The notes under the pieces are model-generated. The model saw only the letters and a program-made list of their open reading frames with translations, did no database searches and was not told where the DNA came from. Of a stretch of DNA of 64,000 bases, positions 1 through 47,749 are shown piece by piece (the stretch's first letter is position 1; each line of letters starts with the position of its first letter). The DNA is taken from assembly GCA_002104905.1 (NCBI GenBank), contig MCFE01000106.1, positions 105,886 through 169,885 on the forward strand. Reading direction: 5' to 3'. Source of the DNA: Basidiobolus meristosporus CBS 931.73 (lineage: Eukaryota; Fungi; Basidiobolomycota). Position numbers and translations under genes: made by a program.

Positions 1-1597
1 CACGAGCTGCTCAGCTCCTTTTATTCGGTCGAAAGAAAACTACAAACTACAAAACCGGTTCCGTGTGGTTTCACAAAATCCTATATTTGAGTATTGTGAT
101 GCATGCGAAGTGAAACCTCAGATTGATGGGTTTTGTTCAAATCTTATTTATGTAGAACACAGCATGTATCTTCTGATTAATTCGACCAATATTTCTCATA
201 CTCTGCATCAGCCAATAACTGGCCAGAAAAGGAGCATCTTTAATTGCTTCGCTCAATCTGAGACTATCATCCAGTGTCAATCAGATCTCTGTTGCTGTGA
301 GATTTCCTATCTCATGTACCTTTTTCCTATCGTCAGCCATGGCTCATCTGCCTATCAGCCTACCTCCCGCTGACAATGGATGGCGAGGAGTGCGCGCCTA
401 AGCTTCCCGGGAATCAATGGTGATCCATCTCATCTCTAAGCGGAGGGTTTTCCAGGATTCACTAGTGCTCTTTGCAGTTCCACATATGGCGATATTGGCA
501 GTTGGCCAAAAGTTGTGGGGCTTTGTCCGATTGTTTTATCTAGGATCTATCATAAGTTTAATCAAATCTATCACAGGAATGCATCCATAAATAGCTTTCC
601 ATAAGGGATTCTGTGGCATGACCCGAGAGTTTCCGCCACTCATCTACCTTGCACTTCATTTTTTTCCGACTGCAGCGCATGTGGCGTAGGAAACTTATTG
701 GCTGCGAAAGATAGATTGAATGATCACTAGATGTTGTTTTCATCGTACCACTTGAAAACAGTAGGTGGTGGATCTTGTTTTAATTCCCCAGGTTAATGAT
801 AGCTACCTATGGCATCAGGGGGATCTTAATCCGCTGGGTTGATTATCGTCGTCTAATCAAATAACGTGGTTGGGAGGGCATCATGTATAGGATAGGTCGA
901 GATAATTCTGAGGCAAGCATTCTGGCAGCTGAGGCCCGCGGATGTTGGTGGATCCAGAGTGGTTTTGCACAGTAGAGTGAAAGCCGGCATTTATGGTAGG
1001 GGCTGATCATACCTGCCTAGCACTTGAAAACACTAGATAAACAGATCATGGGCGACAAGTGTGATTGCTACATTCGAACCCCATCAGGAATTCCGATGGT
1101 AATCTCCTCCGTTTTACCGCCCTTCCTCGCACTTTCATGGCAACGGTTTCAACTTGGCATTTAGATTCATGGGTGATACATGCAGATAGAAATTCATCGA
1201 GATGAGAAGCAACATCGATCAAAACTAGAAAGAATGCCATCTGTATGAAAGGAAGCTCAGGCTTTCCGCTGGGAGGAATTCCGCACATTACCTCTAGATA
1301 AGGGGCTTGTAGCACTATGGGAGATCGCCTTCTTGTATTGTAGTAACCGTATTCGCCATTTCCCATCCGTTCAACTCGCAAATATCTCATCAATGCTTTA
1401 TGACCACACTGATCGTGTGGGTTGACGAATTGATGAATAGCGCCACCACAGTGAACGAAATAGGGGCAACGGTGCTATGCTGAATACACCGAAATGATCC
1501 GAGTCCATCCAAAATTGGAATAGCATGACTGGCTACGTTCGTCAGTCAACTCTGACGCCGCTGTTTCACTTGGCTCGGCGTTTGCCATGAAGCCTAT

Positions 1598-3103
1598 GTG
1601 ATGTTATTGCCATGCGAAGTGCGGTTGCCTTTGAACTTTCTTACTAGCACACAAACCGCACTTACCATGTTTCCTTTAGCTGTGTCAGCAGCCCCTTTTT
1701 CCAAACGCCCTAACCAGGCATTTGATGGCTTAAACAACATAATAAAATACCACACGGACGAGCAAACCCCTGGAAACCCCAAGTCTCTGGGAATGGCAAG
1801 ATTTCAAAATCTTGCTTCCCAGCTGGAGGAAAAGCGAGAAACAGTTGGATTGATACATGGCCTGGATGTTTTCACTCAAGACCTTGACCGGGAAATAGTG
1901 GATGTAAGAAAAGCCCTTTTATACCTCAAAAGGTTAACGCTGACAGATTTTTCCGAAGAACTATGTAAGTATTCAGAGCAAGTCTACCCGGCTTTTGGAA
2001 AGCATGCAGCTTCTACGTATAGATACGCACCTTTTGAATCTTCTGTTGCCATGGTTAGGGCTCCGTTGGAGAACACCTCCACAATGGGAGTGGTTCTAAC
2101 CGAAATCTCTAAAGAAAGAACCTCGTGGCAATACATTCAAGGCGCCGACTATATATCCAGGCTGTCAAACGAGGTATTGGCTAGAAAGCGACAGTTGGAG
2201 GAATCGCTCTACAAACTTGATCAGCTTTCGCTGAAAAACTGGAATACTAGTAACACCACGATCCAATACGTAGGCCGAAAAGTCATTCAACTATTTCGAA
2301 ACCATCAGGGACTACTTCAAGATTTGGGGAATGCAGTACGTAAAGTAGAGGAGACTTACTCTGTCCGGTTTCATCCATACGTCATATTACACGTATTAAC
2401 ATCTGCCATCCAGTACCGCCAACGACAGCTTTCAAGCTTTCTCCTAGATACAACCTACAACCGCATCGAGAAAATGGCTTCCGATATTCAAGAAGCAGTT
2501 CAAGCTTCGATATCTCTGGCATGCCAGATGGTTCAACGGTTCGACAAGCTTATGGATTGGCGAAACAAATTGTTGGAACTTTTTCTTAATAAGAAAAAGC
2601 AAATCTGCAAAGTACGAGCCAGCAGATATATGTTCGATAAAGATCACTCTTTGCAAGAAAACGGACCGCCCCGTGAGTCATTGAAGGGGTTGGGGTCACT
2701 GACATTAGAAACTGGCCAAAAAGCACAACAGTTTCTAACCCGCATCCGTAGTCTATTACAGCAAGTCGATGAGCAGCTGGTGGACAGCAGCAAGACCGAT
2801 CAACATGACTTCCTCATTCAACTGATTGTGGCTTCATTTGATGAGGCAGCAGTCACGGATATAGCGCAGCCATCTTCTGAGCATAGTCTTGTTCCATCTG
2901 CAGCCTTGAATGATCAATTAGAGCTCAATTCAGATGAATTTTCCTCTCGTACCCATGCTTTTGAAGCCGAGCACCAATTGGAACTGGAGCATCTTCTCTT
3001 TAAAATACAGGTGCTACATGTTCAAGGGGAGGTGCTAGCCACTGTAAACGAAGTATTTTCCAGCTGGCTGCAGCCATTTAGCCAGTGTGCAGAGAGTTCT
3101 TAG
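1598..3103 (+). CDS. Intronless ~480-500 aa helical/coiled-coil protein of unknown function (likely start at ATG 1667 or 1793)
   Basis: 1.5-kb open frame with Leu/Gln/Glu-rich heptad-like composition; no family motif recognised. Confidence 0.65.
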   Translation: MMLLPCEVRLPLNFLTSTQTALTMFPLAVSAAPFSKRPNQAFDGLNNIIKYHTDEQTPGNPKSLGMARFQNLASQLEEKRETVGLIHGLDVFTQDLDREIVDVRKALLYLKRLTLTDFSEELCKYSEQVYPAFGKHAASTYRYAPFESSVAMVRAPLENTSTMGVVLTEISKERTSWQYIQGADYISRLSNEVLARKRQLEESLYKLDQLSLKNWNTSNTTIQYVGRKVIQLFRNHQGLLQDLGNAVRKVEETYSVRFHPYVILHVLTSAIQYRQRQLSSFLLDTTYNRIEKMASDIQEAVQASISLACQMVQRFDKLMDWRNKLLELFLNKKKQICKVRASRYMFDKDHSLQENGPPRESLKGLGSLTLETGQKAQQFLTRIRSLLQQVDEQLVDSSKTDQHDFLIQLIVASFDEAAVTDIAQPSSEHSLVPSAALNDQLELNSDEFSSRTHAFEAEHQLELEHLLFKIQVLHVQGEVLATVNEVFSSWLQPFSQCAESS

Positions 3104-3981
3104 ATTAATATGTTGAAAAAAGCCGTTCGCCCCCAAAAGGGTTCTCGGGCGTTCATTATGCTGGACTGTTGAGAACCAGGGCCCCAACTAAATATACATT
3201 GAATTTCACTTTTCCTGAGTTTGAGAGAAGCTATTACCCGCGTACCCAACGGTCGCAAGGACTCTCAATCAACATGTATCTTGTACATTCAATGTAGTAG
3301 TCTAGGTTTAGTGCCTTTAAGCCAAACTAAAATATCAAGTTGGTGTAAGTAACTATATAGCCTTGGTTGGCATGTGGGGTGACATTACGATCATAGGTGT
3401 GGAAATATGTAGGTAAGTTAGCATAGTGTGTATGGCTGGCACGAACAAGCATACACAATGACAACCTGTTCAATCAGAAGTCTACCAAATGTAGCTCCAC
3501 TGTATTGCTATACAAAAACAATGCCACATTCAAATTTGTGGCCAATATACTAGCACACATGCAGTGAAGCGAAGTGCCTTCATTAGTAAGTGCTTCAACA
3601 TCTGTGTTGCAATTCTCGCAAATATGTTGTTTATGTTCTACATGTCTTATGCCAAGTTTGGTGATGGTTTTGGAGTGTATGTAGCTGCAACAGTTGTACT
3701 TGTGTCACAGGAATGCCGGAAATCGCCATCTCCGGGCCCACGGTTTAACTTCCATGCTACCATGCAAGCATATTGGATTGCTGTACTCATACAAATCTTT
3801 TTTACCACCTGTGGCTTGGTTGGGCGTGTATCCCAAAACACTTACTTACCATCCATATTCTGCAAGAGCATTTGCAGTATGCTGTACTACATGATCTTGA
3901 ATGGATTCCTGAAGTGATGCATTGGATATCAGTTTATTGAATCAATGCATTGAGTTTACTGGAGTGGTGACCAGAAGGTAG

Positions 3982-4419
3982 CTATCCTGAGACATTTGTG
4001 GGCGATACATTGCCAAGAACATCCAGAATCTTGACTGGAGACATCGCATAGACCGTGCAATTAGCAGGCTCATAGAGAGCAAAGTAAGTGGGCAGGTCAG
4101 CGACCTGTGGGGAAACATTAATGATCACTCCCACGCGAGTTTGAAGCACCTGCTGTTTCTGAAACTGAGATGGACTTAAACTTTCCAAATCTTTGATAAA
4201 ACCCAGTTCTGGAGTGTACAACCCCAATATTAAGCGCGACTGGTGAGCTATGGTCTCGTCGATTAGCGAAATCCCAAGCCAGTTGGTGATGGAGGAGTGG
4301 ACCTGCCCAGGAGCCTGTATCGATGCTGCAGCTATATGTAGTCGTGGGCAATTGCAGGCCGCGCAGGCCAAGTGCGTCAAGCCTAATAGCACTATAAGGT
4401 GAAGTAGATGATATAGCAT
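3982..4419 (-). CDS. Small secreted protein of unknown function
   Basis: 145-aa ORF with a clear N-terminal signal peptide (MLYHLLHLIVLLGLTHLACA); no known domain recognised. Confidence 0.55.
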   Translation of the reverse strand: MLYHLLHLIVLLGLTHLACAACNCPRLHIAAASIQAPGQVHSSITNWLGISLIDETIAHQSRLILGLYTPELGFIKDLESLSPSQFQKQQVLQTRVGVIINVSPQVADLPTYFALYEPANCTVYAMSPVKILDVLGNVSPTNVSG

Positions 4420-4982
4420 TGTTGGGCTGTTCGTTGGTATCTTTGCGGCAGGTTAGAAGGATGTGCCCATTTTATAAAGGAGTCGTCTTGACTTGGGCTG
4501 TATTGGCCTGCTTAATCAGACTCGATCATATTTGAGTCATGTGGATCTTTATGCTGTATATTTCCTGCCAGTGATATGGTTCTGTGGAGAGTCATTCCAT
4601 TCGAGTGCATGATTCTGGTAATAGTCCTCACTCATCAGCACCACGAAATTATCGTAGTGTCTTGCTTTAGAAGCCCTGCGCACCTCTTGACCATCAATAA
4701 CACCGGAAGTGACTCAAACTGATTGAACTGACCAACTCTTGGAACTTGGCATCCGCCCTTTCACAACCATCTTAATTTTGATCAAAACCCATTATAAAAG
4801 ACTTCGAAACAACCAGCTACCAAGATCCAAGCGAGCAAATTATACACAGAGCCGCGCACTAATTAATCATAAAACTTTTCCTTACAGTGATGATCCATAT
4901 CTTCTAGGTCGCAATGATGGAATCACGTGCGCGGGGAACGCCCATCTTTTTGTTTGCTGTGTTGTTCGGCCTACTCTGAATC

Positions 4983-6010
4983 ATGGAAGAGACGGACCAG
5001 ATTTTCGACGATGCTATCGAGTTTATCCAACTAGAGACGCGAATCCATAGACCTTCCTCTGTTGTCCAAGCTTCCCCTTCCGTCATTTTCCCAAGTGCGA
5101 TAGGAACTCAACGCCCAAAGCCCCTTCAAAGTACCCTTCGTCATATATACTGTGTCTGGAGTCCATTGCTTATACTTTCCCTCTCCTTGCTGTGCTTCAT
5201 AGCAACAAAGATACCGACAGGCCCGGATCCGAAATTACACGCCTATGTATTAAATCTCCAGAAAGAAAACTCTAAATCGGGTTCTAGTAAGTCTCTACCA
5301 TCAGCTCTCACCAAACATACCAGTTCTAAGACCCTCTTCAGAGAATAGAGGCCAAAAATCGAGAGTTTATGAGGTATTGCTTCATTTATTCGAAACCACC
5401 GGTCGGCGTGTTGCTTCTTATGAGCAAAGCACACCGGTGAATGTACTTGGCTTATACTAAGCCTCAATGATACCAATATACTTAATTATCAATGCCTTCG
5501 TTTCGAAGCCACGGGTAAAGCCTGAAAGGGCTCTTGAATCAGAGAACGTGCTAGATAGAAAATCCCAAGAACTACTGGAACTCGGCTCACCCGTCGGCCA
5601 AACTGTGTTTGTGGGTAACTTGTCCAGCAGCGTATCCAACCGATTGGTTGAAGAGATCTTCAAGATATTCGATGAATGTGTCCAAGTAAAGATTGATATA
5701 TGGAAGGCCAGCGGGTTGGCGGAGTACTCATCTGGATCTCCTCACTTCTATTGATACAGGTAGAGATCGTGTGTGATCCATCGACCAAAGTGTCTCGTGG
5801 CTATGGGTTTCTTGTGTTCTCCCGAAGAGATTTGGCGGAGAAAGCCATCGTTTAGTAAGGCGGTTGAATCCATTGGCAATGGCCGCTGGGACTAACCTCC
5901 ATAGTATGCAAAATTTCCGTCTTCTAGGCAATCCTATGGTGCTGAGTTGGAGCACCACTTCAGAAGCCCCCGCCACACTCCCTGTCCTAAACAAGGTTCG
6001 CAGAAGGTAG
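4983..6010 (+). CDS. Multi-exon single-RRM RNA-binding protein
   Basis: RNP2 VFVGNL; after removing GT-AG introns (gtaaag..gatacag; gtaagg..ctaac..catag) the frame gives VEIVCDPSTKVSRGYGFLVF (RNP1)...AIVYMQNFRLLGNPMVLSWS. 5' exon structure is uncertain. Confidence 0.75.
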
Positions 6011-6873
6011 TTTTCAAACATTCTCTCTACTCGAAGTTTGTTTTTATTAACGCATTTCCTATAAATCTAGACCCACACGGTGGCAAGTGCTGTGGGATCA
6101 AAAGACATGCAATCGAGAGCTACTTTTGAGTAGGTCAGTGGCATATCAACGTCCATCGTTCACTGACAGCGAAAGGGACCACTATGTAAGGGAGCACTCT
6201 AGTCAACGAAGACTTTTGGGGGTTTTGAAGTAACCTTTTATTTTGTCAGGTGAACCTTGTTTACCAGAAATTGAAGGCTCTAAGGGTTCCTTACTCGTAG
6301 TAACGAAACGTGACAAGGGGCCCCTCTTGCTGTGTCTATCGGTCTACTTGAATTCTATTCAAGGATAGACCAACCAACATCATGCTTATCATAGGCTGGG
6401 CTGTATCGAAAAATACATTATGCCATAGAACGGCCAAAAGTATCAAGCATCATGTCTCAGTACCCGCTTTTACTCATCACAGTGAAGCCCATGCGCACAT
6501 ATCCTTCAAGCCGTTCTCTTGAATGACTAAGCCCACAGGTTCGTAATATTGGGATGCTGGCTATGAGAAAATAAATCTAGAATTTCGTCCTCCCGATCAA
6601 ATCCTGGTGAAAGTACATTAGATTGTCCTCAGGTACATTGCCAGGCAGGGCCCTGAAGTATCGTGTGAGCTTGGTTTATTGAGAGCGGGGTTTCCAGATG
6701 CTCACATCAGAAGGAAATATACATGATGTGAAGGAGGGGTTCCGTACAGTAGAACTGATGAATGGTTGAATTAGAGGGATAATACATTACGGACTGTGGC
6801 TGAGAACATGAGAAAAACGTTGTTACAAATACTGCTCTTGGGGAGTAAAGAGTCCCTTGATGAAGGTTGCCAA

Positions 6874-9362
6874 TCATTCACGATTGCTATCGAACAAGTA
6901 TAAGAAGTCCTGCATGGTAAGCTTGCCAATCTTCATCGATTGGATTTCACCAAGGGCACCCTTCGCCAGTTGCCGTTTCTTTTCCTGAAGGTTGATGATA
7001 CGATCCTCGACTGTGCCCTCTATTGTAAGCCGCACAACATGGACAGGTAATTGCTGACCAATTCTATGAACGCGGTCGATAGCCTGCTCTTCGAGAGCAG
7101 GATTCCACCAAACATCTAATAGGATGACCCGATTGGCACAAGTCAAGTTCAGTCCAAGCGAGCCGCACTTCAATGAAATGAGCAGAACTGTGGTTTCCGG
7201 GTCTGATTTCAGTTGCTCTAGACTCTGTTCGCGAAGTTTGTTCACCATGGAGCCGTCATAGCGGCAGAACTTGAAGCCGCCCTTCTTCAGTGGTTCCTCA
7301 ACAAGGTCCAACATCGAAGTGAACTGAGAGAAGATGATGGTTTTGAAGGCAGGGTTTTCCGCTCGAGTTTTTTTCAAAATGTCCATCATTTTGCTGATCT
7401 TAGCCGATTCCATGAGATGCCCTTCATGGAGTGGTGCTTGGGAAGCAATGGCCGATACACAATCAGGGCATTGCAAATCGCTCGGGTTCTTTAAAACTTC
7501 AAAACAGGTCGAGCATTTTTTGGTTGATTTTTCCAACGCCATGCCTCCAAGAAGGTCTGCCAAGTCATCAAGCTGCTGATCTTCAGAGTCCTGTTGGGGG
7601 ACAGGATCCAAAGAGTCCAAGTCGACGCCGACAGATGAGCTCACGAGATTTGGGTGATTGCAAGCTTGACGAAGTCGTAGAAGCAAGCATAAGATGTTCG
7701 TGTACTGACGATTGGCGCCGCCTTGCTGAAGGATATCCTTGAAACGATCCTGCATTTTGTTCTCCAGCTTTTCATAGAAGAGTCGCTCTCTGGGACTGAA
7801 AGGAATGGTGCAAATATCAACTCTACGCTCGGGCAGGTTAAGCAGAGGTTTGCCTTCTATCATGGTGGTTTTGGTTCGGCGCAGCATAATCGCTTTGAGG
7901 ATCACTTGTAGACGCTTGATAGCTGTCTGCTCTCTGCCTTGTTGAAGTGGACGCGTGATTTGGTCACAGAATGTGGGATAATGCAAATACGGTTTGACTT
8001 TCAAGAAATTCAGCAGGGAGTACAGCTCATCAACGTTGTTCTGGATTGGGGTACCCGTGAGGCACCAGCGTTTAACGCTGCTCAACGAGGAGCATCCCTG
8101 AGCCGACCTGGTGGACTTGTTTTTGATGGTTTGGGCCTCATCCAGAACCACGCGGTACCATTTCATCTGGTAAAGGGGTCCCAATTTGGATTTTGCCTTG
8201 GGCACGTCGTCATCCTTCTTCTTGGATTCCTTGGTGTATTCTGACGCCACAACATTATACGTGGTGATCACAATGTCGTACTGCTTGAGCTTAAGAGGAT
8301 CCTTCGTTCTGCTAGGGCCATGGTGAACATAGACAGAGAATGCTTGCTTCTCCACTTTTGTCTGAATCTCCTTCTCCCATTGCTTGATCAATGCAAGGGG
8401 GCCAACAATTAGAGTGGATTTGGTTTCGCTGGTAGGTGGCTTGTTTGTAAGTAGTAAGGAGATGGTCTGGACAGTTTTTCCCAAACCCATATCATCCGCT
8501 AATATCCCACCGTTGTGCTGGGAGTTTTCGCGGTCAACCATCCATGCAACGCCCTTGAACTGGTGATTCATAAGAGTTACCTTGAGCCCAGGTGGGTTTT
8601 CTATATCACACTTCACGTCCACCTCCTCTGGGATGGTTTGGAAGAATTCCCGAATTTCATCCCGAGACTTCTTCATGCCGCCGTCCAAGGCACCTGCGGA
8701 ATGATCGAAGCCGTATTTCTTGCGCTCTAGTTCGTTGGCAATCTGATTCTTCTTCGTCTCAATGGGAGAGTACTCTCTGTACGGTCCGTGGTTGGCACTG
8801 TTCTTGATGTCACGGGCAGTAAATTTACGATTCCAAGTGGGGCTGTTGGGGGAGTGCAGTTCAATCAAGTTTCGGTTCTGCTGCAGATCCAACTGCTTGT
8901 TTTTGTTCAATTTCGAGGCAGGAAGTACCTCAGGTGGAGTACCTCCGTTGTTGATCATGGCCTGCTGTCTGAACTTCGATGGGAAGCGGGGATTTTCTAT
9001 CGGATATGGAGGTGAATAAAGCGTCGATAAAAGTTGTTTAGTTTATACGTACGATTATCGGGCGTAGTGTTCTTTTTATTCTGGGGAACTAGCTGGTGCG
9101 GTTTTGCACCAGGGAAGTTGTAGTTGTAGCGTGGCTTGGCTTTGTTGCTTCGATGCTTCTCGAGTAACGAAGGGGACCCGAAAGTGGGCATGTAAGCTTT
9201 CTGCTTCTCGCTAACACTTGGCTCTGGGTGACTGAGGTTTGAATGGCGGAACTTCTCGGCGTAGAAGGGCTTACGAGCCCCTTGGACAGGAGAGCTCTCG
9301 CCAGTTAAGTCAATAACTCTTGTCTCTGGGCTCTTGACATTTGGGGTATTGTGGACACTCAT
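6874..9362 (-). CDS. SNF2-family ATPase of the Rad5/16-like group (Uls1/Ris1/Rrp2-like), 2 exons
   Basis: GGILADDMGLGKT, VVLDEAQTIKN, WCLTGTPIQN, FSQFT, QAIDRVHRIGQ; Cys cluster between helicase lobes; N-terminal SIM-like VIDLT; intron gtacgt..gatag at ~8997-9052 joins the two ORFs in frame. Confidence 0.92.
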
Positions 9363-37494: not shown

Positions 37495-38678
37495 ATGCCA
37501 GGTAAATATTATGTTGCTTCCAAAACCATTGCTGTAAATTAGCATGATGCTGAACAACATCTTCCACTGCGGTCTTAGATAACACGCCAATAACCTGGGT
37601 GACTATGGTGGCAGATTTATTTATCTCCATTTCCTACCTGGCCATCCCGGTAGAAATCTTCTTCTTCCAACGCACTCTGACCCTCCCTCTCCCAATGCTC
37701 TACAAGAGTGTCCTGCTTTTATTCGAGGCTTTCATCACTGCCTGTGGCGCCACCCACTTCGTCACCGTGTGGAGGCCTTTCGCCGATACCGATCTAGCCC
37801 TGTGTGTTGTCAAGGTAGCCACCGCCGTTGTCTCTACCATCACCGCAGCCCTCCTGATCCGAGTCTTCCCCAAGGCGTTCTCGTTGCCAGCCAAGGCAGC
37901 CTGGCTGGAGGAGGAGCTCGGGTCCCATATGCGGCACGAGCAGTCGCTCCGCATGGCCAACGACCTTCTCCTGAAGTTCCGTAAAATCACCCAGCACATT
38001 CGCAAGACACTTGACACCGCATCGGTCTGTCAGACCGCGGTATTCGAACTCTCGGTGGCACTGGGAGTTGGCTGTGCCATATACATCAAGGAAGGGGATA
38101 CTTACGTTTGCACTCATGAGGATTACAGACGCATGAATGATCATTCCCTTCGCCACTCGGACAAAGATGTGTTCTGGCAAAAAATCGCCATCTCAATGGA
38201 TAACAAAGTCATCAACCGAATGACCACGTTATCATATGCCTGCTGCCTTAACAAACGGGATCTCTGTGACATGGTCGGAGAAGGAGTGAATCTACCATTC
38301 AAGGCTGCTATGGGCGTGCGTTTCGAATTAGATGAACCAGACTCAGGGTTCGTGCTGATTTATTCTAGCGATGAAAACTGGAGTTTACCCGAACAAGAGG
38401 TGGAGCTCTTTGAGGATATCGTGGGTCAGATTGAGATAGCGCTACAGCAATCCTCCCAACTTCGTAGCGAATCTCATGGAAAATCAACAATGTCACATCA
38501 CAAACAAAGAAGTCAGAAATACCTCAATGAGCAGAGACTATCCTCACTCCGACAGAGCGCAGTATGCCCTGTGATGCCATCCTCTTCACCACCACCACCA
38601 CCACCACCACCTCCGTTTTCAAGTGATGATATCCAGGAATACGAAGATTACGATACAGAACCCAAATATTGGAATTAG
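37495..38678 (+). CDS. Ethylene-receptor-like protein A (ETR1-type ethylene-binding TM domain + GAF, no histidine kinase)
   Basis: ADLFISISYLAIPVEI, FEAFITACGATHF, KVATAVVSTITA, ITQHIRKTLD, LFEDIVGQIEIALQQS align with plant ETR1 (D25, Y32, I35, P36, C65, H69 equivalents); 7-nt first exon plus phase-1 intron 37502-37578. Confidence 0.9.
38587..38611 (+). repeat. (CCA)n microsatellite encoding poly-Pro in receptor A tail
   Basis: caccaccaccaccaccaccaccacc. Confidence 0.9.
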
Positions 38679-39489
38679 GTACATTTTCGAGCATTAACGT
38701 AACTTTCGTCGGAACCCTCTGTAAAAATTGGTGTATAGCTATTTAATTATTCGACTCTAACGTTCCACTCTATCTTATAAAATCATCATCCGCTACTCAA
38801 TGGAAATAAACTATTCAAAAACTACGGTGCTACGTATTGTTGAGGGTTTGCTTAATACTGTTCAATGAAACAAGTGTTATTGACTAGTTGCAATTAAACT
38901 GGCTAGTCAAGGCTTTTCGTAGAGTTGAAATGCAAACCGAGAGCCAAGTCCCATTTAAGAGGTTTGAGTTTGCTCTCGAGATTAGAAAGAAAAGCATTAG
39001 CTCGTTTCATAAAACCACCCATCGCAAAAGATCAGGTACGAAACGGTTGAAGAGTACACTCAACATCAATGAAGTCTACTGCGGTGAGCAAAGGCGTATA
39101 ACAACACGATTGACTGGAAGGTTAGCAAAACCCTACCCTTTCAGCGTATCTCCTGCACAAGCTCATGCACCGCAGTAGCTTATCGTGGCTATGTTGATAT
39201 TACCTGCCGTCAACGATTCAGGCCAATCATGCAGTTGTAAATATCTACCGAAAATCACTTGATATAAAACATTTCCATAAATCACAAGAATTCGCTGAGA
39301 CTTCATGGGTGGTTGCTAAAACACCCTCAATAGTGACTGTAAATTCATCTGTGATTGTAAAAAATAAACATTTCACTTGCTTTATACCACCATACAATGC
39401 AATCAGCGCCCTTTGTCTGGTTAGCCCTCCAGTAACACTTGAAGCAAAATTCCTTGACATACTCACTGATACTGTAATACGCTTTGGTC

Positions 39490-42400
39490 ATGGCTGATGA
39501 ATTTGATGACTTTGATGATCTCGCACTGGATGATGCTTTTCTGGCTGCTGTTGACCAAATAGAAAAACAGGCCGTTTCCTCACACCCAACCACTCATTCG
39601 TCCACTAATCACATACCTCCGCCTTCACACCAGACCTTCAAACCAACACCAAAAGCCAACTTTGGTTTCAATCCTCCCGATTCTGATTTTAGCAACGACG
39701 GAGCTTTTCCTGTAATATACATTCTTTTACATTACTTGAGAGTACTCTGTACAACTTACTCATATTAAACTCCGTATTAGACCATGTCACGCAACCCACC
39801 CACTTCACGCACCAAGCCGATACCCAAAACACTGAACAGTAAGAAGAAAAATACCGGCTCCAACTCCAATGCCGGAAATCAAAAAACCCTTTGGAGTATG
39901 TTTGCCATGGATAAAGAAAACCCCGATACCATTTCCAAGCCGACCAAGAAACCCACCGTATGTATACTTCTTCTATCCTAGTCTATTCCCGGTGTTTACA
40001 CCTGAATGCTCCCTGTAGAAAACACCCAGCAACGCCTCGAATTCGGTGTTGAAGTTTTCCCCAAACTCTTCGGTGGACATATCTCGATGCGACCCGGACG
40101 CGATCAATACCTGGATTTATCCAATCAATTATCCCCTCCGTGATTACCAGTTCAATATCGTGTCAAAAGCGCTGTTTCAAAACACCTTGGTATCCCTTCC
40201 AACCGGTCTCGGCAAAACGTTCATTGCTGCCGTAGTCATGTACAATCATTACCGTTGGTTTCCTCAGGGGAAGATTGTATTTATGGCCCCGACGAAGCCC
40301 TTGGTGGCCCAGCAGATTGAGGCTTGCCACAATATCTGTGGTATCCCTCAGGAAGATACAGTGGAGTTGACCGGAGCCCAGTCCCCAGACAAGAGAAAGG
40401 TTGATTGGGTCCATAAAAGAGTTTTTTTTCTAACCCCCCAGGTGCTACAAAATGACCTGGTACGGGATACTTGCCCCGCGGAGGATATCGTATGTCTGAT
40501 AATCGATGAAGCTCATAGGGCTCGAGGGGAGCACGCGAATTGCGTTGTGGTTAGGGAGCTTTCTAATAGGAACCCGCTCTTTCGGATTCTAGCGCTGTCA
40601 GCTACGCCAGGTACTGACAATACGACTGTCCAAGACGTGGTGAACAATCTGAAAATCTCCAATATCGAGCTTAGATCCGAGGAATCGCTTGATATCCAAA
40701 AGTACACTCACGGTAGAAAAGTCGATGTCATCGTGGTCCCACTGACGAACACGATCAAGGAGATATCAAAGCAGTTTTGCATATGCATGGAGCCTTACAC
40801 CTCTCGTCTTGTCAGGATGCAGGCAATCTGGGAAAAAGACCCCCAACGGGTATCCAGATATATGCTCATCTTGGCAAGAAATAAATTCCGTGCAAACTCG
40901 GCAGCCTTCTCTCCAGAGCAGAAAGCCACTGTCGAAGGTGATTTTGGGATTTGCCTTGCACTATCGCACGCTTACAGCTTATTGTGCCAACACGGGGTGA
41001 GGCCTTTTTATAGCGCACTTTATGGGATTGTTCAAGAGGCGAAGGACGGAAAGAGAATATCCAGAGCTCGTCAAGATTTGTTGAAGAACCCCGTTTTCGT
41101 CAACCTTATGAATCGTATAGAAAAGATGATGGAAGAGCCGACGTTTATCGGACATCCCAAGCTAGAGAAGCTCGTGTCTTACGTGGTCAACTACTTTGTG
41201 AACCATCAAGAGAACAACGATGGCTTGGAGGAAGACGCTCAAAGCCAAACCCGGGTTATGATCTTCGCCGAATACCGCGAATCCGTTGATGAGATTGTTA
41301 AATCACTTAACGACCATTCACCAATGATCAGACCGATGTCCTTCGTAGGTCAGGCATCTAAGAAGAGCAAGAAAGGCTACACACAGAAAGAGCAGTTGGC
41401 GGTGCTAACCGCGTTTAAAAAAGGCGGGTACAATGTGATCGTATCTACGTGCATTGGCGAAGAGGGTCTGGATATCGGTGAAGTCGATCTTATCATTTGC
41501 TACGATTCCCACAACTCTCCGATTCGACTGCTGCAACGAATGGGGCGTACGGGTCGTAAGCGAAAAGGTAGAATTTGTATGTTGCTTGCCGAAGGAAAAG
41601 AAGAGCAGATGTACAAACAATCGCAAAACACGTATAAATCTATTCAACGGGCCATTGCGTCTGGTTCAAAAATCAGTCTTTACGACGGCAATCCAAAACT
41701 ATTACCGGAAGATGTCAACCCAGTGTGCAGCAAGGAGACGCTGGTTATTCCGGAATACCTAGTCAAAGAAACCAAGAAATCTCGTCGGAAAACAATTGAG
41801 CAAAACGTGCACCTGATCAAGGACGAGGACGATGATATCGAAGGACAGTATATTCGGTTTCTTAGCAGAATCGAGGGCTCGAATATGTCTCTTTCTAAAT
41901 TTGCGAAATACCAAACTACTCCAAGTCCAACATACCTGGTCTCTCATTCCCAACGAACCATTGATTTTGTAAATATAATGAGCGGAATGGAGACATTAGG
42001 TTTTATGGACGATGAAGATCAGTACAGTGCGCAGCTGCAGGGATATCTGAATATGAACGATGTTATCCCATCCAAAATCGCCTACCCTTCCTCGAGAAGG
42101 CCCAAGTCCTTGAAGGGCAACACTAAGCCAGTAATCACCGAGATACAGGCGTCGAATGCTGATGAGAGTTTCCCGCTTATGATGGACCTCGAGGATGATG
42201 CTGACGATTTTATGATCATGCAAGGATTGGAGGGTATCTTTCCTGAAAATAACGCTTCCAGGCCGTCGACATCACGGGAAGCGGCTATCGTTTCTGAAAC
42301 ATCCGGCTCCAGAGCGTATGAAAGTTCAAATAGAGTGGCACCCATAGAAATTGACTTGGAGGATATAGAATACGACGAGTTACCCATAATCCCTCAAAGC

Positions 42401-43099
42401 CCCGAAATGAGTTTTGACACAAATACTCACGAGAATGCAGCTATCGATATTCCTGAGTCGGACGATGATATATTTATTGATGACACCATGGAGCAGGAAA
42501 TGGCGGCTTTAGTGGATTCTCATCAACTCCAGAATCAGCCGGGAACCACTTGCAACTTTCTAAATACCAAAGCAACGAAAACTGTCGGTTCGCCAACCGC
42601 GAATGGCCTAGCAAAACCCACGACCAGAGAATCCCAGCTAACATTCAAGTACAGCTACACTCCGAAGAGTGAGGCCGTAGATGAGAATCAACATTCCCAT
42701 GATGCGTTATTTGAGATCTCCAAGGACATTTCGCTAGATCTGGATAGCTCCTTCACGATTGACGACCCTCACGTCACACATTCATCAACCAAGAAACTGC
42801 CCATCAACCATAGTTACGATCCAAGCAAGGAACCTGCAGTGCAGGATATTCCTCCGTTTCCCAAGAACGTGAAATTTGGTGATTGGCGGGAAGTAGCGAA
42901 GATTTTATCGTCACGGAAGGTCGTTCACACCCCCGCCACCGAACACCAAAAGGGTGTAGATCCCCATGTAACAGATATTTCCTTGACCACAGCAGCCGCC
43001 AAACCCATTATTTCCCCAACGAAGCCACCCAGCGATACAGTTCGCCTAGCAAGTAAAAGCAAGCTGGATCAATTCCGGTTCAAGAGACGTAAATCCTGA
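39490..43099 (+). CDS. MPH1: FANCM/Mph1/Fml1 DEAH helicase, 3 exons
   Basis: YPLRDYQFNIV, LPTGLGKT, IIDEAHRA, LSATPG, STCIGEEGLDIGEVDLIICYD, QRMGRTGRKR; two GT-AG introns near the 5' end. Confidence 0.95.
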
Positions 43100-43498
43100 G
43101 ACCCCGGTCCTAGGGTCAATTGAGCACCAAGACTTCTCGAACCACCATCTATTTTTACCGGATTCAATTTCGCTCGCATCTTCAAGGAGGCATCGATGTT
43201 TTTGGATTCATGTAAATATTGTTTTATTGTGCCGCATCACTATCATTAGAATCTACCCCCATCATGTTCTGCAACTTCGATGACAAATATCATGCTCGCC
43301 TCCAAGCACTTACCAGACATGTTGTTTGAAATGAAGGCTACGCACTTCAAGATTTACTTGCCGTCATTGAAGTAATGCGGATAAATAAAGGTCAAGATGG
43401 TTCCCTTTGATGATGTTGGGTATAGAGTTGGACCAATCAAGTGAATTAAATTAGAAAACACCAAAATTCACTAGCAAAGAGATGTCGGGATTGTTAGG

Positions 43499-44635
43499 TT
43501 ACATGGGTGTTGTATCACACTGCTTCTCCTGAGATGGATACGATGATTGTATGGAAAGTGAGGTATTCTCGTGAAGATTGGAGAGGCTGAAACCAGCTGT
43601 CTCCTCTGCTTTGGTGTGGGCCCCCGGTTCCTGTGGCTTTCCCTTGGCCTCGTTCCTTATCTGGGCAGATTGCTGAAGTGCAATCTCAATCTGGCCCACG
43701 ATATCCTCAAAAAGTTCCACCTCCTGCTCGGGTAAACTCCAGGTCGCATCACTTGAGTAAATCAATACGAATCCTGAATTACATTCATCTAGCTGGAATC
43801 GGGCGCCCATAGCAGCCTTGAATGGTAGATTCACTCCTTCCCCGACCATGTCACAGAGATCCCGCTGGTTCAAGCAACACGTATATGACAAAGTGGACAT
43901 TCTGTTGATAGCCTTGTTGTCCATGGGGATCACTACCTTCTGCCAGAAAATACTTTTCTCGACATGGCGAAAATGGCGATCGTTTGTTCTTCTGTAATCC
44001 TCATGAGCGCAAACGTAAGTATCCCCTTCCTTGATGTATATGGCACAGCCAACTCCCAGTGCCACCGAGAGTTCGAATACCGCGGTCTGACAGACCGATG
44101 CGGTGTCAAGTGTCTTGCGAATGTGCTGGGTGATTTTACGGAACTTCAGGAGAAGGTCGTTGGCCATGCGGAGCGACTGCTCGTGCCGCATATGGGACCC
44201 GAGCTCCTCCTCCAGCCAGGCTGCCTTGGCTGGCAACGAGAACGCCTTGGGAAAGACTCGGATCAGGAGGGCTGCGGTGATGGTAGAGACAACGGCGGTG
44301 GCTACCTTGACAACACACAGGGCTAGATCGGTATCGGCGAAAGGCCTCCACACGGTGACGAAGTGGGTGGCGCCACAGGCAGTGATGAAAGCCTCGAATA
44401 AAAGCAGGACACTCTTGTAGAGCATTGGGAGAGGGAGGGTCAGAGTGCGTTGGAAGAAGAAGATTTCTACCGGGATGGCCATGTACGACAAGGATATCAG
44501 TAAGTCAGCAATCATTGTTATCCACGAAAGGGCGCTGTTTTCCACTGAATTAAAAGCAATTCATTAATACAGATCATACGGTACGAGAGCAACTCATTTG
44601 CAAATGATGGGGCTAGCGTGTTACGTACTTAGCAT
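43499..44635 (-). CDS. Ethylene-receptor-like protein B (ethylene-binding TM domain + GAF, no histidine kinase)
   Basis: Same motifs as copy A; same 7-nt first exon (ATG CTA A) and phase-1 intron; stop only ~400 bp from the Mph1 stop. Confidence 0.9.
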
Positions 44636-46777: not shown

Positions 46778-47749
46778 ATGATGCAGATAGGTATCATAGT
46801 GCTGAACGTGTTTTCCATCGTCGCATCTATTCTGGTAATAGCAGTCATCATTGGCATTAGGTGCTATCGAAAAACGCTAGTGGACCGGATGTCCTTTAGG
46901 CTTACCGCGTACATTGCAACCCTTGATGCCGTACTGAGTGGTGTTCTGATCGGGTTTTCCTTCACCGACTCTGTATTTGTGACGAGATGTTTGCGTGTCA
47001 TAGCCTTGGGCGTGGACCTGAGCTCGATCTTTCTAACAATGAACATAGCATTAAATCTCCAACTAATATTTCTGAATAATAAGCGGGTTACTATGCGATA
47101 CGAATACTTCTATGTATTTGGCTCGTTGGGCTTGGGACTGATTGTTGCCGTTCTATCCGGCATCTATCGTGCGCGTACCACCTCCCTGGTCCTCCCCGTG
47201 GTGGTTTTTGTCGCCGTCACGTACTGCTTGTCTGTGGTGATTATGATCGTCTATAGGCTGATCAGAAGCAAGGATGGCCAGAGAGATCAGGCCAGGCAGC
47301 TCAACGCGCTTAGTGATAGCAACGTACGTAGAGCAGTTGTCCGGATCTTACTCTACCCATTAGTACTGATTGTAGCACAACTGCCGTTCGCCATCGCCTT
47401 TGTCTTGCTATTAACCTGCGGCGAAAGCTGCATTGACATCAATATCGGAAATACTCCAGTCACCTTGGTGGAGATGTCAATCTATACTATGTCCTTGCAG
47501 GGGATCCTGAACTCCGTAGCATTTATGTTTGATCCGGCCCTAAGAATAGTGGTGGTGATGATCAAAAATGACATGGTCAGCGACTACTTCTACTCTGAAC
47601 ACCAGGTCTTTGAGAAGGATCACAAGCCCACCATTCATCGTTGGCTGGTTCACAAGTACTTGGTACCGCACACTGAGGAATGCGCAAAGATTTCCAGCAG
47701 CTCTGAGCCATTGGTTACCAAAGACATCGAGGTCCTGAAAATGATGTAG
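46778..47749 (+). CDS. 7-TM GPCR-like receptor (Git3/cAMP-receptor-like), intronless
   Basis: Seven hydrophobic segments; DRMSFRL after TM1, RILLYPLVLIVAQLP (TM6), LQGILNSVAFMFDPALR (TM7). Confidence 0.82.
   Translation: MMQIGIIVLNVFSIVASILVIAVIIGIRCYRKTLVDRMSFRLTAYIATLDAVLSGVLIGFSFTDSVFVTRCLRVIALGVDLSSIFLTMNIALNLQLIFLNNKRVTMRYEYFYVFGSLGLGLIVAVLSGIYRARTTSLVLPVVVFVAVTYCLSVVIMIVYRLIRSKDGQRDQARQLNALSDSNVRRAVVRILLYPLVLIVAQLPFAIAFVLLLTCGESCIDINIGNTPVTLVEMSIYTMSLQGILNSVAFMFDPALRIVVVMIKNDMVSDYFYSEHQVFEKDHKPTIHRWLVHKYLVPHTEECAKISSSSEPLVTKDIEVLKMM

What the first reader, a model, noticed from the sequence alone, without database searches (positions are those of the whole stretch)
37495..44635. Two kinase-less ETR1-type ethylene receptor homologs in a fungus
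Seen: both proteins keep the three-helix ethylene-binding domain with equivalents of ETR1 D25, Y32, I35, P36 and the Cu(I)-ligating C65/H69 (ACGATH), plus a full GAF domain. They then stop after short unrelated tails, and only ~810 bp (A) and ~400 bp (B) separate them from Mph1, leaving no room for a HisKA/HATPase/receiver module. Established: ETR1-like sensors are known in plants, cyanobacteria and some early-diverging fungi, usually as hybrid histidine kinases. Inference: these are output-less receptors that may act as decoys, ethylene/Cu sinks or heterodimer partners signalling through GAF contacts. The divergent tails (poly-Pro in A) could recruit different partners.
Basis: partly seen in the sequence, partly recalled or inferred. 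Interest (0 to 1): 0.8.

Follow-up and report, generated by a model that had tools for sequence, protein, structure and literature searches.

The report
Kinase-less ethylene-receptor-like gene pair, Basidiobolus
Two intact, strongly conserved genes in the fungus Basidiobolus meristosporus encode the ethylene/copper-binding membrane domain and GAF domain of plant-type ethylene receptors with no kinase part; this truncated type was already published for a sister gene in the same genome, but the data here show it is a maintained gene family, not decaying remnants.

Summary
Gene A (37495-38678, +) and gene B (44635-43499, -) both match Pfam ETR1_N (E about 1e-20). Both keep every ETR1 ligand and signalling residue tested, including D25, C65, H69 and K91. 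Both carry a GAF fold (AlphaFold2 pLDDT 88.6; Foldseek and profile matches to solved GAF domains), then stop. No kinase or receiver remnant lies in the window or in four related loci.

The window is Basidiobolus meristosporus CBS 931.73 (contig MCFE01000106.1). Hérivaux et al. 2017 already reported a "strikingly truncated" ethylene-receptor homologue in this strain and read it as gene erosion. An Ancylistes preprint reports genes with only the ethylene-binding and GAF domains. The kind is therefore known.

What this work adds:
- The family has at least five intact copies here and four in B. ranarum.
- It is under strong purifying selection (dN/dS about 0.02-0.08).
- It occurs as inverted pairs, mostly around the Mph1 helicase gene. 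The bodies are homogenised by gene conversion.
- The tails are not unrelated. Two tail types (alpha, beta) with a shared Pro-rich/acidic/Trp C-terminal motif recur across loci. Only the window's beta tail has decayed.

Most likely these are working copper-dependent ethylene-type sensors whose output goes through GAF, helix and tail protein contacts. Expression could not be tested.

The parts
37495..37501 (+). Gene A (alpha type), exon 1: ATG plus 4 nt
   Evidence: ATGCCAG followed by GTAAAT. Splicing to 37579 gives MPDNTPITWVTM..., which parallels the annotated N-terminus MSDQTSIAWVTM of B. ranarum P0002.
37502..37578 (+). Gene A intron (77 nt, GT..AG, phase 1)
   Evidence: Read from the sequence. 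The same intron position is seen in L004 and L001. It is not confirmed by RNA.
37579..38678 (+). Gene A exon 2, ending in the stop at 38676-38678. The whole protein is 368 aa (357 aa from the internal ATG at 37605 = P0003).
   Evidence: Open reading frame. The public gene call for P0003 is at this place.
37602..37886 (+). Gene A ethylene-binding domain: three transmembrane helices with the Cu(I) ligands C47 and H51 and the D4-K70 pair
   Evidence: Pfam ETR1_N E = 4e-20; residue map; helices 2-24, 31-56 and 63 onward in the model.
38016..38489 (+). Gene A GAF domain (aa 138-295, including its closing helix)
   Evidence: AlphaFold2 model; Foldseek matches to GAF domains; profile matches to solved GAF domains.
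38490..38675 (+). Gene A alpha-type tail. A helix continues to about aa 320 (..RLSSLRQSAV), followed by a disordered stretch PSSSP(9)FSSDDIQEYEDYDTEPKYWN.
   Evidence: Model. The tail recurs in Bm L001 alpha and in Br L002 and L004 alpha, with pN/pS 0.09-0.27 over the end motif.
39490..43099 (+). Mph1/FANCM-type helicase gene enclosed by the pair (it has introns near its 5' end)
   Evidence: Pfam DEAD, ResIII, Helicase_C and FANCM-MHF_bd. The start is set by homology to the B. ranarum models.
43499..44544 (-). Gene B (beta type) exon 2, with the stop at 43499-43501. The whole protein is 350 aa (338 aa from the internal ATG at 44515 = P0001).
   Evidence: Open reading frame; P0001.
44545..44628 (-). 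Gene B intron (84 nt, GTACGT..CAG, phase 1)
   Evidence: Read from the sequence. It is not confirmed by RNA.
44629..44635 (-). Gene B exon 1 (ATGCTAA)
   Evidence: Splicing gives MLMENSALSWITM...
44234..44530 (-). Gene B ethylene-binding domain
   Evidence: Pfam ETR1_N E = 1.5e-21; residue map.
43631..44104 (-). Gene B GAF domain
   Evidence: The body (aa 1-295, including the GAF) is 89% identical to gene A. Over the part of the GAF beyond the conversion tract, dN/dS against A is 0.08.
43502..43630 (-). Gene B beta-type tail, degenerate. It keeps FSLSNLHENTSLS but has lost the PPPPPF...YDMKPLNW end.
   Evidence: pN/pS is 0.5-0.7 against the other beta tails.
37639..38129 (+). Gene-conversion tract, arm in gene A (491 nt, 2 differences from the arm in B)
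   Evidence: GC3 is 0.70 against 0.50 in the rest of the gene. The whole inverted repeat spans 37596-38482 and 43638-44524.
43991..44481 (-). Gene-conversion tract, arm in gene B

Best explanation
These are two intact, selected members of a Basidiobolus-specific family of kinase-less ethylene-receptor homologues.

Architecture. Each protein is a membrane protein built from these parts:
- three transmembrane helices that form the ETR1-type Cu(I)/ethylene site (Cys-His ligands, with the Asp-Lys bridge to helix III);
- a continuation of helix III as a long helix into a GAF domain;
- the closing helix of the GAF domain, running on for about 25 residues (probably a vestige of the coiled coil that once led into the kinase);
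- a disordered tail that, in the alpha copy, carries a conserved Pro-rich/acidic/aromatic end motif.

Proposed working (inferred, not shown). Ligand binding at the copper site shifts helix III, as in ETR1. This changes the pose of the GAF domain and the C-terminal helix, and so changes which proteins bind the GAF domain and the tail. The most likely partner class is one of the many hybrid histidine kinases that other readers of this scan noted in this genome (not checked here), regulated in trans. The rice OsERS2 GAF domain inhibits the kinase MHZ1/OsHK1 in this way, and the engineered ETR1(1-349) fragment signals in Arabidopsis without its kinase.

The pair. The alpha and beta genes are an old duplicate pair held as an inverted repeat around Mph1. 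Gene conversion keeps their sensor halves nearly identical, while the tails stay type-specific. In this locus the beta tail has lost its motif.
For: Shown:
- Pfam ETR1_N match for both proteins.
- All twelve functional binding-domain residues checked are kept, including D25 and K91, which Azhar et al. 2023 tie to copper/ethylene binding and signal transfer.
- GAF fold confirmed.
- No kinase or receiver sequence nearby.
- Strong purifying selection at saturated synonymous divergence. A against B outside the conversion tract: dS 1.9, dN 0.15, dN/dS 0.08. Binding domain against paralogous loci: dN/dS 0.02-0.04. B. ranarum alpha against beta: 0.06.
- Nine intact or contig-cut copies in two species, all ending at the same place with type-specific tails.
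- The alpha end motif has pN/pS 0.09-0.27.
- The alpha -> Mph1 -> <- beta layout occurs twice in B. ranarum.
- The fungal clade is separate from plants (100/100 support), so descent is vertical within fungi.

Precedents for output without a kinase: ETR1(1-349) (PMC4238421) and the OsERS2 GAF domain acting on MHZ1 (PMC6981129). Other readers of this scan noted many hybrid histidine kinases in this genome (unchecked).
Against: - There is no expression evidence; no RNA run was listed.
- No ligand binding has been measured for any fungal ethylene-binding domain of this clade.
- No partner is known, and the tail motif matches no motif class that I could test.
- The plant dimerising cysteines C4 and C6 are absent, and the A+B dimer prediction gave no verdict.
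- The window's beta tail looks relaxed (pN/pS 0.5-0.7), so at least that output element is being lost here.
- Hérivaux et al. read the truncation as erosion.
Confidence: 0.55

Rival explanations
1. The domain is a working copper site but senses something other than ethylene, such as copper status, redox state, another small alkene or another gas. Output would go through the same GAF and tail contacts.
For: No fungal ethylene-binding domain of this clade has been assayed. Basidiobolus lives in animal guts and dung as well as in plant litter. Residue conservation shows the site is kept, not which ligand it binds.
Against: Every residue needed for ethylene binding in ETR1 is kept, including those not needed for copper binding (Y32, I35, P36, I62, K91). 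Cyanobacterial and proteobacterial domains with the same residues do bind ethylene (abstracts).
Confidence: 0.15
2. The proteins are passive ethylene or copper sinks, or decoys, with no signalling output (one of the first reader's ideas).
For: There is no enzymatic output domain. Several copies per genome could raise binding capacity.
Against: A sink needs only the membrane domain. Yet the GAF domain (dN/dS 0.06-0.08) and the alpha tail motif (pN/pS 0.09-0.27) are strongly constrained. In addition, two tail types are kept apart despite conversion of the bodies.
Confidence: 0.1
3. The genes are eroding relics of a hybrid histidine kinase on the way to loss, which is the 'gene erosion' reading of Hérivaux et al. 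2017.
For: A degradation series exists. Rozella and Paraphysoderma have the full kinase plus receiver. Conidiobolus, Neoconidiobolus and Entomophthora have a degenerate kinase in which the phospho-acceptor His is replaced in the alignment. Basidiobolus has none. One alpha copy is a mere remnant in L003, and the window's beta tail is decaying.
Against: The reading frames are intact in nine copies (five full-length, four cut by contig ends) at saturated synonymous divergence, with dN/dS 0.02-0.08. The stop position and the end motifs are conserved.
Confidence: 0.05
4. The membrane domains form a cation (Ca2+) channel, as reported in 2026 for rice OsERS1/2, so no kinase is needed.
For: PMC13261662 reports channel activity of ethylene receptors that is independent of C65.
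Against: That activity required the N-terminal C4 and C6, which are absent here. The report is a single one on plant proteins. It also leaves the constraint on the GAF domain and the tail unexplained.
Confidence: 0.05
5. The proteins are regulatory subunits that work only as heterodimers with a kinase-bearing ethylene receptor encoded elsewhere.
For: Plant receptors form mixed complexes through GAF domains (cited).
Against: No long form appears among the hits in the exhaustive 1.8-billion-protein search whose names were looked up. The best non-Basidiobolus hits are Entomophthoromycotina proteins at 40-44% identity. None appears in the word searches either. The BLAST survey of Hérivaux et al. 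reported only the truncated form. This genome itself was not searched exhaustively here.
Confidence: 0.05
6. The gene models are wrong and the transcripts splice onward to kinase exons.
For: None beyond the lack of RNA data.
Against: There is no kinase-like coding sequence in 64 kb. The flanks are occupied by Mph1. Conservation ends exactly at the stop codon in four alpha and four beta copies.
Confidence: 0.02

Closest known systems
Truncated ethylene-receptor homologues of Entomophthoromycotina and Basidiobolus (Bm|388937| and Conidiobolus CcHHK3; Hérivaux et al. 2017, PMC5285503)
   Same: Same strain and same family. P0004 (K493DRAFT_388940) and its convergent 363-aa neighbour on contig MCFE01000683.1 are 75-78% identical paralogues of gene A. 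They have the same binding-domain-plus-GAF-then-stop architecture.
   Different: The paper lists one Basidiobolus gene and calls it erosion. Here there are at least five intact genes in the genome, in inverted pairs, under strong purifying selection, with two conserved tail types. Conidiobolus CcHHK3 (P0157, 621 aa) still carries a degenerate kinase region.
Ancylistes closterii genes with only the binding domain and GAF (bioRxiv 10.1101/2023.12.22.573025)
   Same: Three binding helices with the essential residues, one GAF domain, and no kinase or receiver region at all.
   Different: They come from a different lineage (Entomophthoromycotina proper).
Arabidopsis ETR1 and its engineered N-terminal fragment etr1(1-349)
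   Same: Same domain order and almost the same length as the engineered fragment. The binding-site residues are identical. The fragment signals without the kinase and independently of CTR1.
   Different: About 25% identity. There are no C4/C6 disulfide cysteines. The natural stop is followed by a conserved tail motif. The plant partners (RTE1, CTR1, EIN2) were not examined in this fungus.
Rice OsERS2 GAF domain inhibiting the histidine kinase MHZ1/OsHK1 (PMC6981129)
   Same: It offers a route by which a receptor's GAF domain alone regulates a separate histidine kinase. Other readers of this scan noted many hybrid kinases in this genome (unchecked).
   Different: This is a functional analogy only. 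No interaction was tested here.
Full-length fungal ethylene-receptor hybrid kinases (Rozella RaHHK2 = P0014, Paraphysoderma P0017 and P0012, Allomyces)
   Same: The binding domain and GAF are homologous over aa 2-292 (E 1e-32 to 1e-26) and fall in the same fungal clade.
   Different: Those proteins carry HisKA, HATPase_c and a receiver domain. The Basidiobolus proteins end about 60 residues after the GAF domain.

Membership tests
ETR1-type ethylene-binding domain proteins (Pfam PF25487 ETR1_N) | N-terminal three-helix membrane domain scoring above the family's gathering threshold | tested here: met
   72.3 and 76.9 bits against a cut-off of 27. Three helices in the AlphaFold2 model.
ETR1-type ethylene-binding domain proteins (Pfam PF25487 ETR1_N) | Cu(I) ligands Cys65 and His69 in helix II | tested here: met
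   C47 and H51 in both proteins.
ETR1-type ethylene-binding domain proteins (Pfam PF25487 ETR1_N) | The Asp25-Lys91 pair and the helix I/II residues needed for ethylene binding (Y32, I35, P36, I62) | tested here: met
   D4, K70, Y11, I14, P15 and I44. These positions are at least 90% invariant across 61 homologues. The roles of the residues come from PMC10266040.
ETR1-type ethylene-binding domain proteins (Pfam PF25487 ETR1_N) | Saturable binding of ethylene and Cu(I) | not testable with these tools
   Needs a 14C-ethylene assay in yeast and a BCA copper titration.
Canonical ethylene receptors (plant ETR/ERS; fungal group XVIII hybrid histidine kinases) | GAF domain directly after the binding domain | tested here: met
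   Fold, profile against solved GAF domains at E = 9e-15, and homology to receptor GAF regions. Pfam GAF is not hit by the single sequences.
Canonical ethylene receptors (plant ETR/ERS; fungal group XVIII hybrid histidine kinases) | Histidine-kinase or kinase-like module (HisKA/DHp plus HATPase_c) | tested here: not met
   No Pfam hit. The proteins end 43-62 residues after the GAF domain. No remnant was found by tblastn. At most a vestige of the linker/DHp helix remains (alignment; helix to aa 320).
Canonical ethylene receptors (plant ETR/ERS; fungal group XVIII hybrid histidine kinases) | C-terminal receiver domain (ETR-type and hybrid kinases; absent in ERS-type) | tested here: not met
Canonical ethylene receptors (plant ETR/ERS; fungal group XVIII hybrid histidine kinases) | N-terminal Cys4/Cys6 disulfide-linked dimer (plants) | tested here: not met
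   There is no cysteine before helix I in either protein. Dimerisation itself is untested (one search gave no verdict).
Basidiobolus/Entomophthoromycotina truncated ethylene-receptor homologues (Hérivaux 2017; Ancylistes preprint) | Binding domain with the essential residues, a single GAF domain, no receiver, and the kinase region incomplete or absent | tested here: met
   The genes are 70-78% identical to named B. meristosporus and B. ranarum proteins. They lie in the same genome as the published Bm|388937|.

The most novel reading that the evidence does not exclude
The binding domain plus GAF unit may be an autonomous, kinase-independent ethylene-signalling module that fungi have kept for a very long time. 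It would be a natural counterpart of the engineered ETR1(1-349) 'N-terminal signalling' fragment. Output would be encoded in a short conserved C-terminal motif (PPPPF-acidic-YD.EP.YW) and in GAF contacts. The alpha and beta forms would act as a heterodimer whose sensor halves are kept identical by gene conversion across a palindrome. If so, Basidiobolus would give a simple system in which to find the long-sought partners of kinase-independent ethylene-receptor signalling.
Probability: 0.25. Interest if true: 0.6.

Novelty: new member of a known kind. Interest (0 to 1): 0.35.

Why it matters
How ethylene receptors signal without their kinase activity is an open point in plant biology. The unidentified 'N-terminal' or alternate route of ETR1 is one example, and GAF-mediated control of other kinases is another. 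A fungal family that has discarded the kinase entirely, yet keeps the ligand site, the GAF domain and a tail motif under strong selection, argues that the sensor-plus-GAF unit is a sufficient signalling device.

The practical gains are modest:
- It corrects the published 'gene erosion' reading for Basidiobolus.
- It defines the family: at least five genes in B. meristosporus, in inverted pairs, with two tail types.
- It names concrete constructs for ethylene-binding and interaction assays.

It does not reveal a new kind of receptor.

Tried and rejected
- **RNA evidence.** The look-up of sequencing runs listed no run. Splicing, stop codons and expression remain unconfirmed.
- **A+B dimer prediction**. 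No verdict (0.31 against a mark of 0.34). It is not used as evidence either way.
- **Pfam GAF.** Not detected on the single sequences at E <= 0.1. Resolved by the fold and profile searches.
- **Kinase or receiver remnants.** tblastn with six relatives' C-terminal halves gave only chance hits.
- **Hidden continuation of the beta tail.** The other frames downstream of B's stop hold no PPPPF..W motif. The motif is truly lost.
- **Long-form Basidiobolus receptors.** None was found. However, only 30 of the top 150 representatives were named, and the genome itself was not scanned.
- **Short ETR1_N hits in the exhaustive search**. They look like plant gene fragments, one fused to a retroelement reverse transcriptase, so they are not natural kinase-less relatives.
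- **My own early error.** I first took L001 and L003 for a different species. One search showed that the window is B. meristosporus CBS 931.73 itself, so those loci are paralogues.
- **P0002** could not be located by exact look-up. Its locus was reached through P0026.
- **Recent transfer from plants.** Rejected, because the fungal and plant clades are separated at 100/100 support.
- **A functional link between the receptors and Mph1.** No evidence. The L001 pair lacks Mph1, so the linkage is best read as structural (a palindrome).
Full report
**What is there.** The stretch holds three genes. Gene A lies on the plus strand, gene B on the minus strand, and an Mph1/FANCM-type helicase gene (39490-43099, plus strand) lies between them.

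- A and B are an inverted repeat: the arms at 37596-38482 and 43638-44524 are 887 nt long and 89% complementary.
- The proteins are 89% identical over 295 residues. After that, BLASTP finds no similarity between them.
- Each gene has a 7-nt first exon and a short phase-1 intron. For A these are 37495-37501 and 37502-37578. For B they are 44635-44629 and 44628-44545.
- The same micro-exon is present in a paralogue (L001) and in the B. ranarum orthologue. There it is part of the NCBI model P0002, whose N-terminus MSDQTSIAWVTM parallels MPDNTPITWVTM in A and MLMENSALSWITM in B.

**Source.** An exact look-up places gene A on contig MCFE01000106.1 of GCA_002104905.1, which is Basidiobolus meristosporus CBS 931.73.

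**Check of the observation.**

- Both proteins match Pfam ETR1_N far above threshold.
- I aligned them with an ETR1 orthologue that carries ETR1 numbering (Erythranthe P0163, named). Both keep D25, Y32, I35, P36, E38, F58, I62, C65, T68, H69, K91 and T94. D25 and K91 are the pair that Azhar et al. 2023 link to copper/ethylene binding and to signal transfer to helix III.
- The plant cysteines C4 and C6 are absent.
- Pfam GAF is not hit by the single sequences. Three other lines show a GAF domain:
  - phmmer aligns residues 2-292 to the binding domain plus GAF of bona fide receptors.
  - The AlphaFold2 model (61-sequence alignment, pLDDT 88.6) has a GAF fold at about aa 138-262, matched by Foldseek to solved GAF domains with a target-normalised TM-score of 0.65-0.75.
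  - The family profile hits solved GAF domains at E = 9e-15.
- The distances to Mph1 are 811 and 399 bp.
- tblastn with the kinase and receiver halves of six relatives finds nothing in the window or in the related loci.

**The family.**

In B. meristosporus there are two further loci:
- L001 holds a convergent alpha/beta pair with no Mph1 between the genes.
- L003 holds a beta gene, a helicase fragment and a 41-residue alpha remnant.

In B. ranarum the layout alpha -> Mph1 -> <- beta occurs twice, in L002 and L004. These are about 76% identical in the helicase, so they are old duplicates. Both contigs break inside the repeated receptor genes.

All copies stop at the same place, and the tails fall into two types:
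- The alpha type reads ..(R/G)L(S/A/G)SLRQSA.. SSPPP(P)FS..(D)IQEYE.YD.EPKYW(N/H).
- The beta type reads ..F(R/Q)LSN.H..T..SLPPPP(P)FSY.D..KD.E.YDMKPLNW(P/H).

The tail of gene A, including its poly-Pro run, is nearly the same in B. ranarum L004. The window's gene B keeps only FSLSNLHENTSLS and has lost the Pro-rich/Trp end. No alternative frame restores it.

The tails are thus homologous, conserved and type-specific, not unrelated.

In the alignment the first part of the tail lines up with the coiled-coil/DHp entry helix of full-length receptors. The model continues the closing helix of the GAF domain to about residue 320. I read this as a vestige of the lost kinase's first helix, which is an inference.

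**Selection and concerted evolution.**

- Between A and B, CDS nucleotides 35-525 differ at only two sites. This is a conversion tract, at 37639-38129 and 43991-44481.
- Outside the tract, dS is about 1.9, dN is 0.15 and dN/dS is 0.08.
- Against the paralogous loci, the binding domain has dN/dS of 0.02-0.04. B. ranarum alpha against beta gives 0.06.
- The alpha end motif has pN/pS of 0.09-0.27. The window's beta tail has 0.5-0.7, which looks relaxed.
- In the gene bodies, the two genes of one locus are usually more alike than same-type genes of different loci, while the tails group by type. The bodies therefore evolve in concert and the tails are kept apart.
- GC3 is 0.70 inside the tract against 0.50 outside, as expected for GC-biased conversion.

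**Relatives and descent.**

- The nearest non-Basidiobolus proteins are from Neoconidiobolus, Conidiobolus and Entomophthora (576-626 aa). They have a degenerate kinase region, and in the alignment the position of the phospho-acceptor His is occupied by other residues.
- Next come full hybrid kinases of Paraphysoderma and Rozella, and then plant receptors.
- A maximum-likelihood tree gives a Basidiobolus clade (100/100 support) inside a fungal clade that is separated from plants (100/100). The order among the fungal groups is unresolved.

**What is known.**

- Hérivaux et al. 2017 reported one truncated homologue in this very strain (Bm|388937|) and one in Conidiobolus. They called the structures 'striking' and a case of gene erosion.
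- The Ancylistes preprint describes genes with only the binding domain and GAF. It suggests GAF-based action, citing OsERS2 and MHZ1.
- In Arabidopsis, ETR1(1-349) signals without the kinase.
- In rice, the OsERS2 GAF domain inhibits the kinase MHZ1.
- A 2026 paper reports that ethylene receptors act as cation channels, in a way that depends on C4 and C6.

**Reading.**

- The kinase-less architecture is real, but it is already published for this species.
- The data here argue against erosion and against a mere sink, because the GAF domain and the alpha tail are constrained as tightly as many enzymes.
- They also argue against pairing with full-length receptors, since none was seen in Basidiobolus. 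The genome itself was not scanned exhaustively.
- I therefore favour working copper-dependent ethylene-type sensors whose output is protein binding through the GAF domain, the C-terminal helix and the tail. The most plausible target is one of the many hybrid histidine kinases that other readers of this scan noted in this genome (unchecked). These mechanistic steps are inference.

**Limits.** No RNA run was available. The dimer prediction gave no verdict.

Noticed in passing
window 37639-38129 and 43991-44481: A sharp 491-nt near-identical tract (2 differences) sits inside the 887-nt inverted repeat. It covers the binding domain, the linker helix and the first GAF strands. GC3 is 0.70 inside the tract against 0.50 outside, which is a signature of GC-biased gene conversion. 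This is the same tract as the scan's note s1-227753.
   Followed up: partly
L002 (B. ranarum JASJQH010008155.1) 1-6638; L004 (JASJQH010007171.1) 1-7047: The receptor-alpha -> Mph1 -> <- receptor-beta triad occurs twice in B. ranarum. The two triads are about 76% identical in the helicase, so they are old block duplicates. Both contigs end inside the receptor repeats, which suggests that identical conversion tracts broke the assembly there too.
   Followed up: partly
L001 10001-12931; L003 9968-15224: Paralogous loci in the same genome differ in content. L001 has a convergent alpha/beta pair only about 730 bp apart, with no Mph1 and with almost the whole body converted (pS 0.06-0.12). L003 has a beta gene, a 563-aa helicase fragment and a 41-residue alpha remnant. 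Both loci are followed by a 508-aa P450 gene at the same distance, which suggests a segmental duplication.
   Followed up: partly
window 43502-43630 (-): The beta tail of this locus has lost the conserved PPPPPF...YDMKPLNW end. Its B. ranarum counterpart (L004 beta, P0002) has W replaced by G and reads on past the usual stop. The beta tail therefore seems to be decaying specifically in this orthologous block.
   Followed up: partly
window 46778-47749 (+): An uninterrupted 323-aa open reading frame rich in hydrophobic stretches (a possible multi-pass membrane protein) has no Pfam match at E <= 0.01.
   Followed up: partly
P0009, P0157, P0011 (alignment A1, columns about 395-405): In the Neoconidiobolus, Conidiobolus and Entomophthora homologues, the H-box position that holds the phospho-acceptor His in Rozella and plant receptors (SHE/NHE) reads NKE or GQE. 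Their kinase regions therefore look non-catalytic, an intermediate step in the loss series.
   Followed up: no
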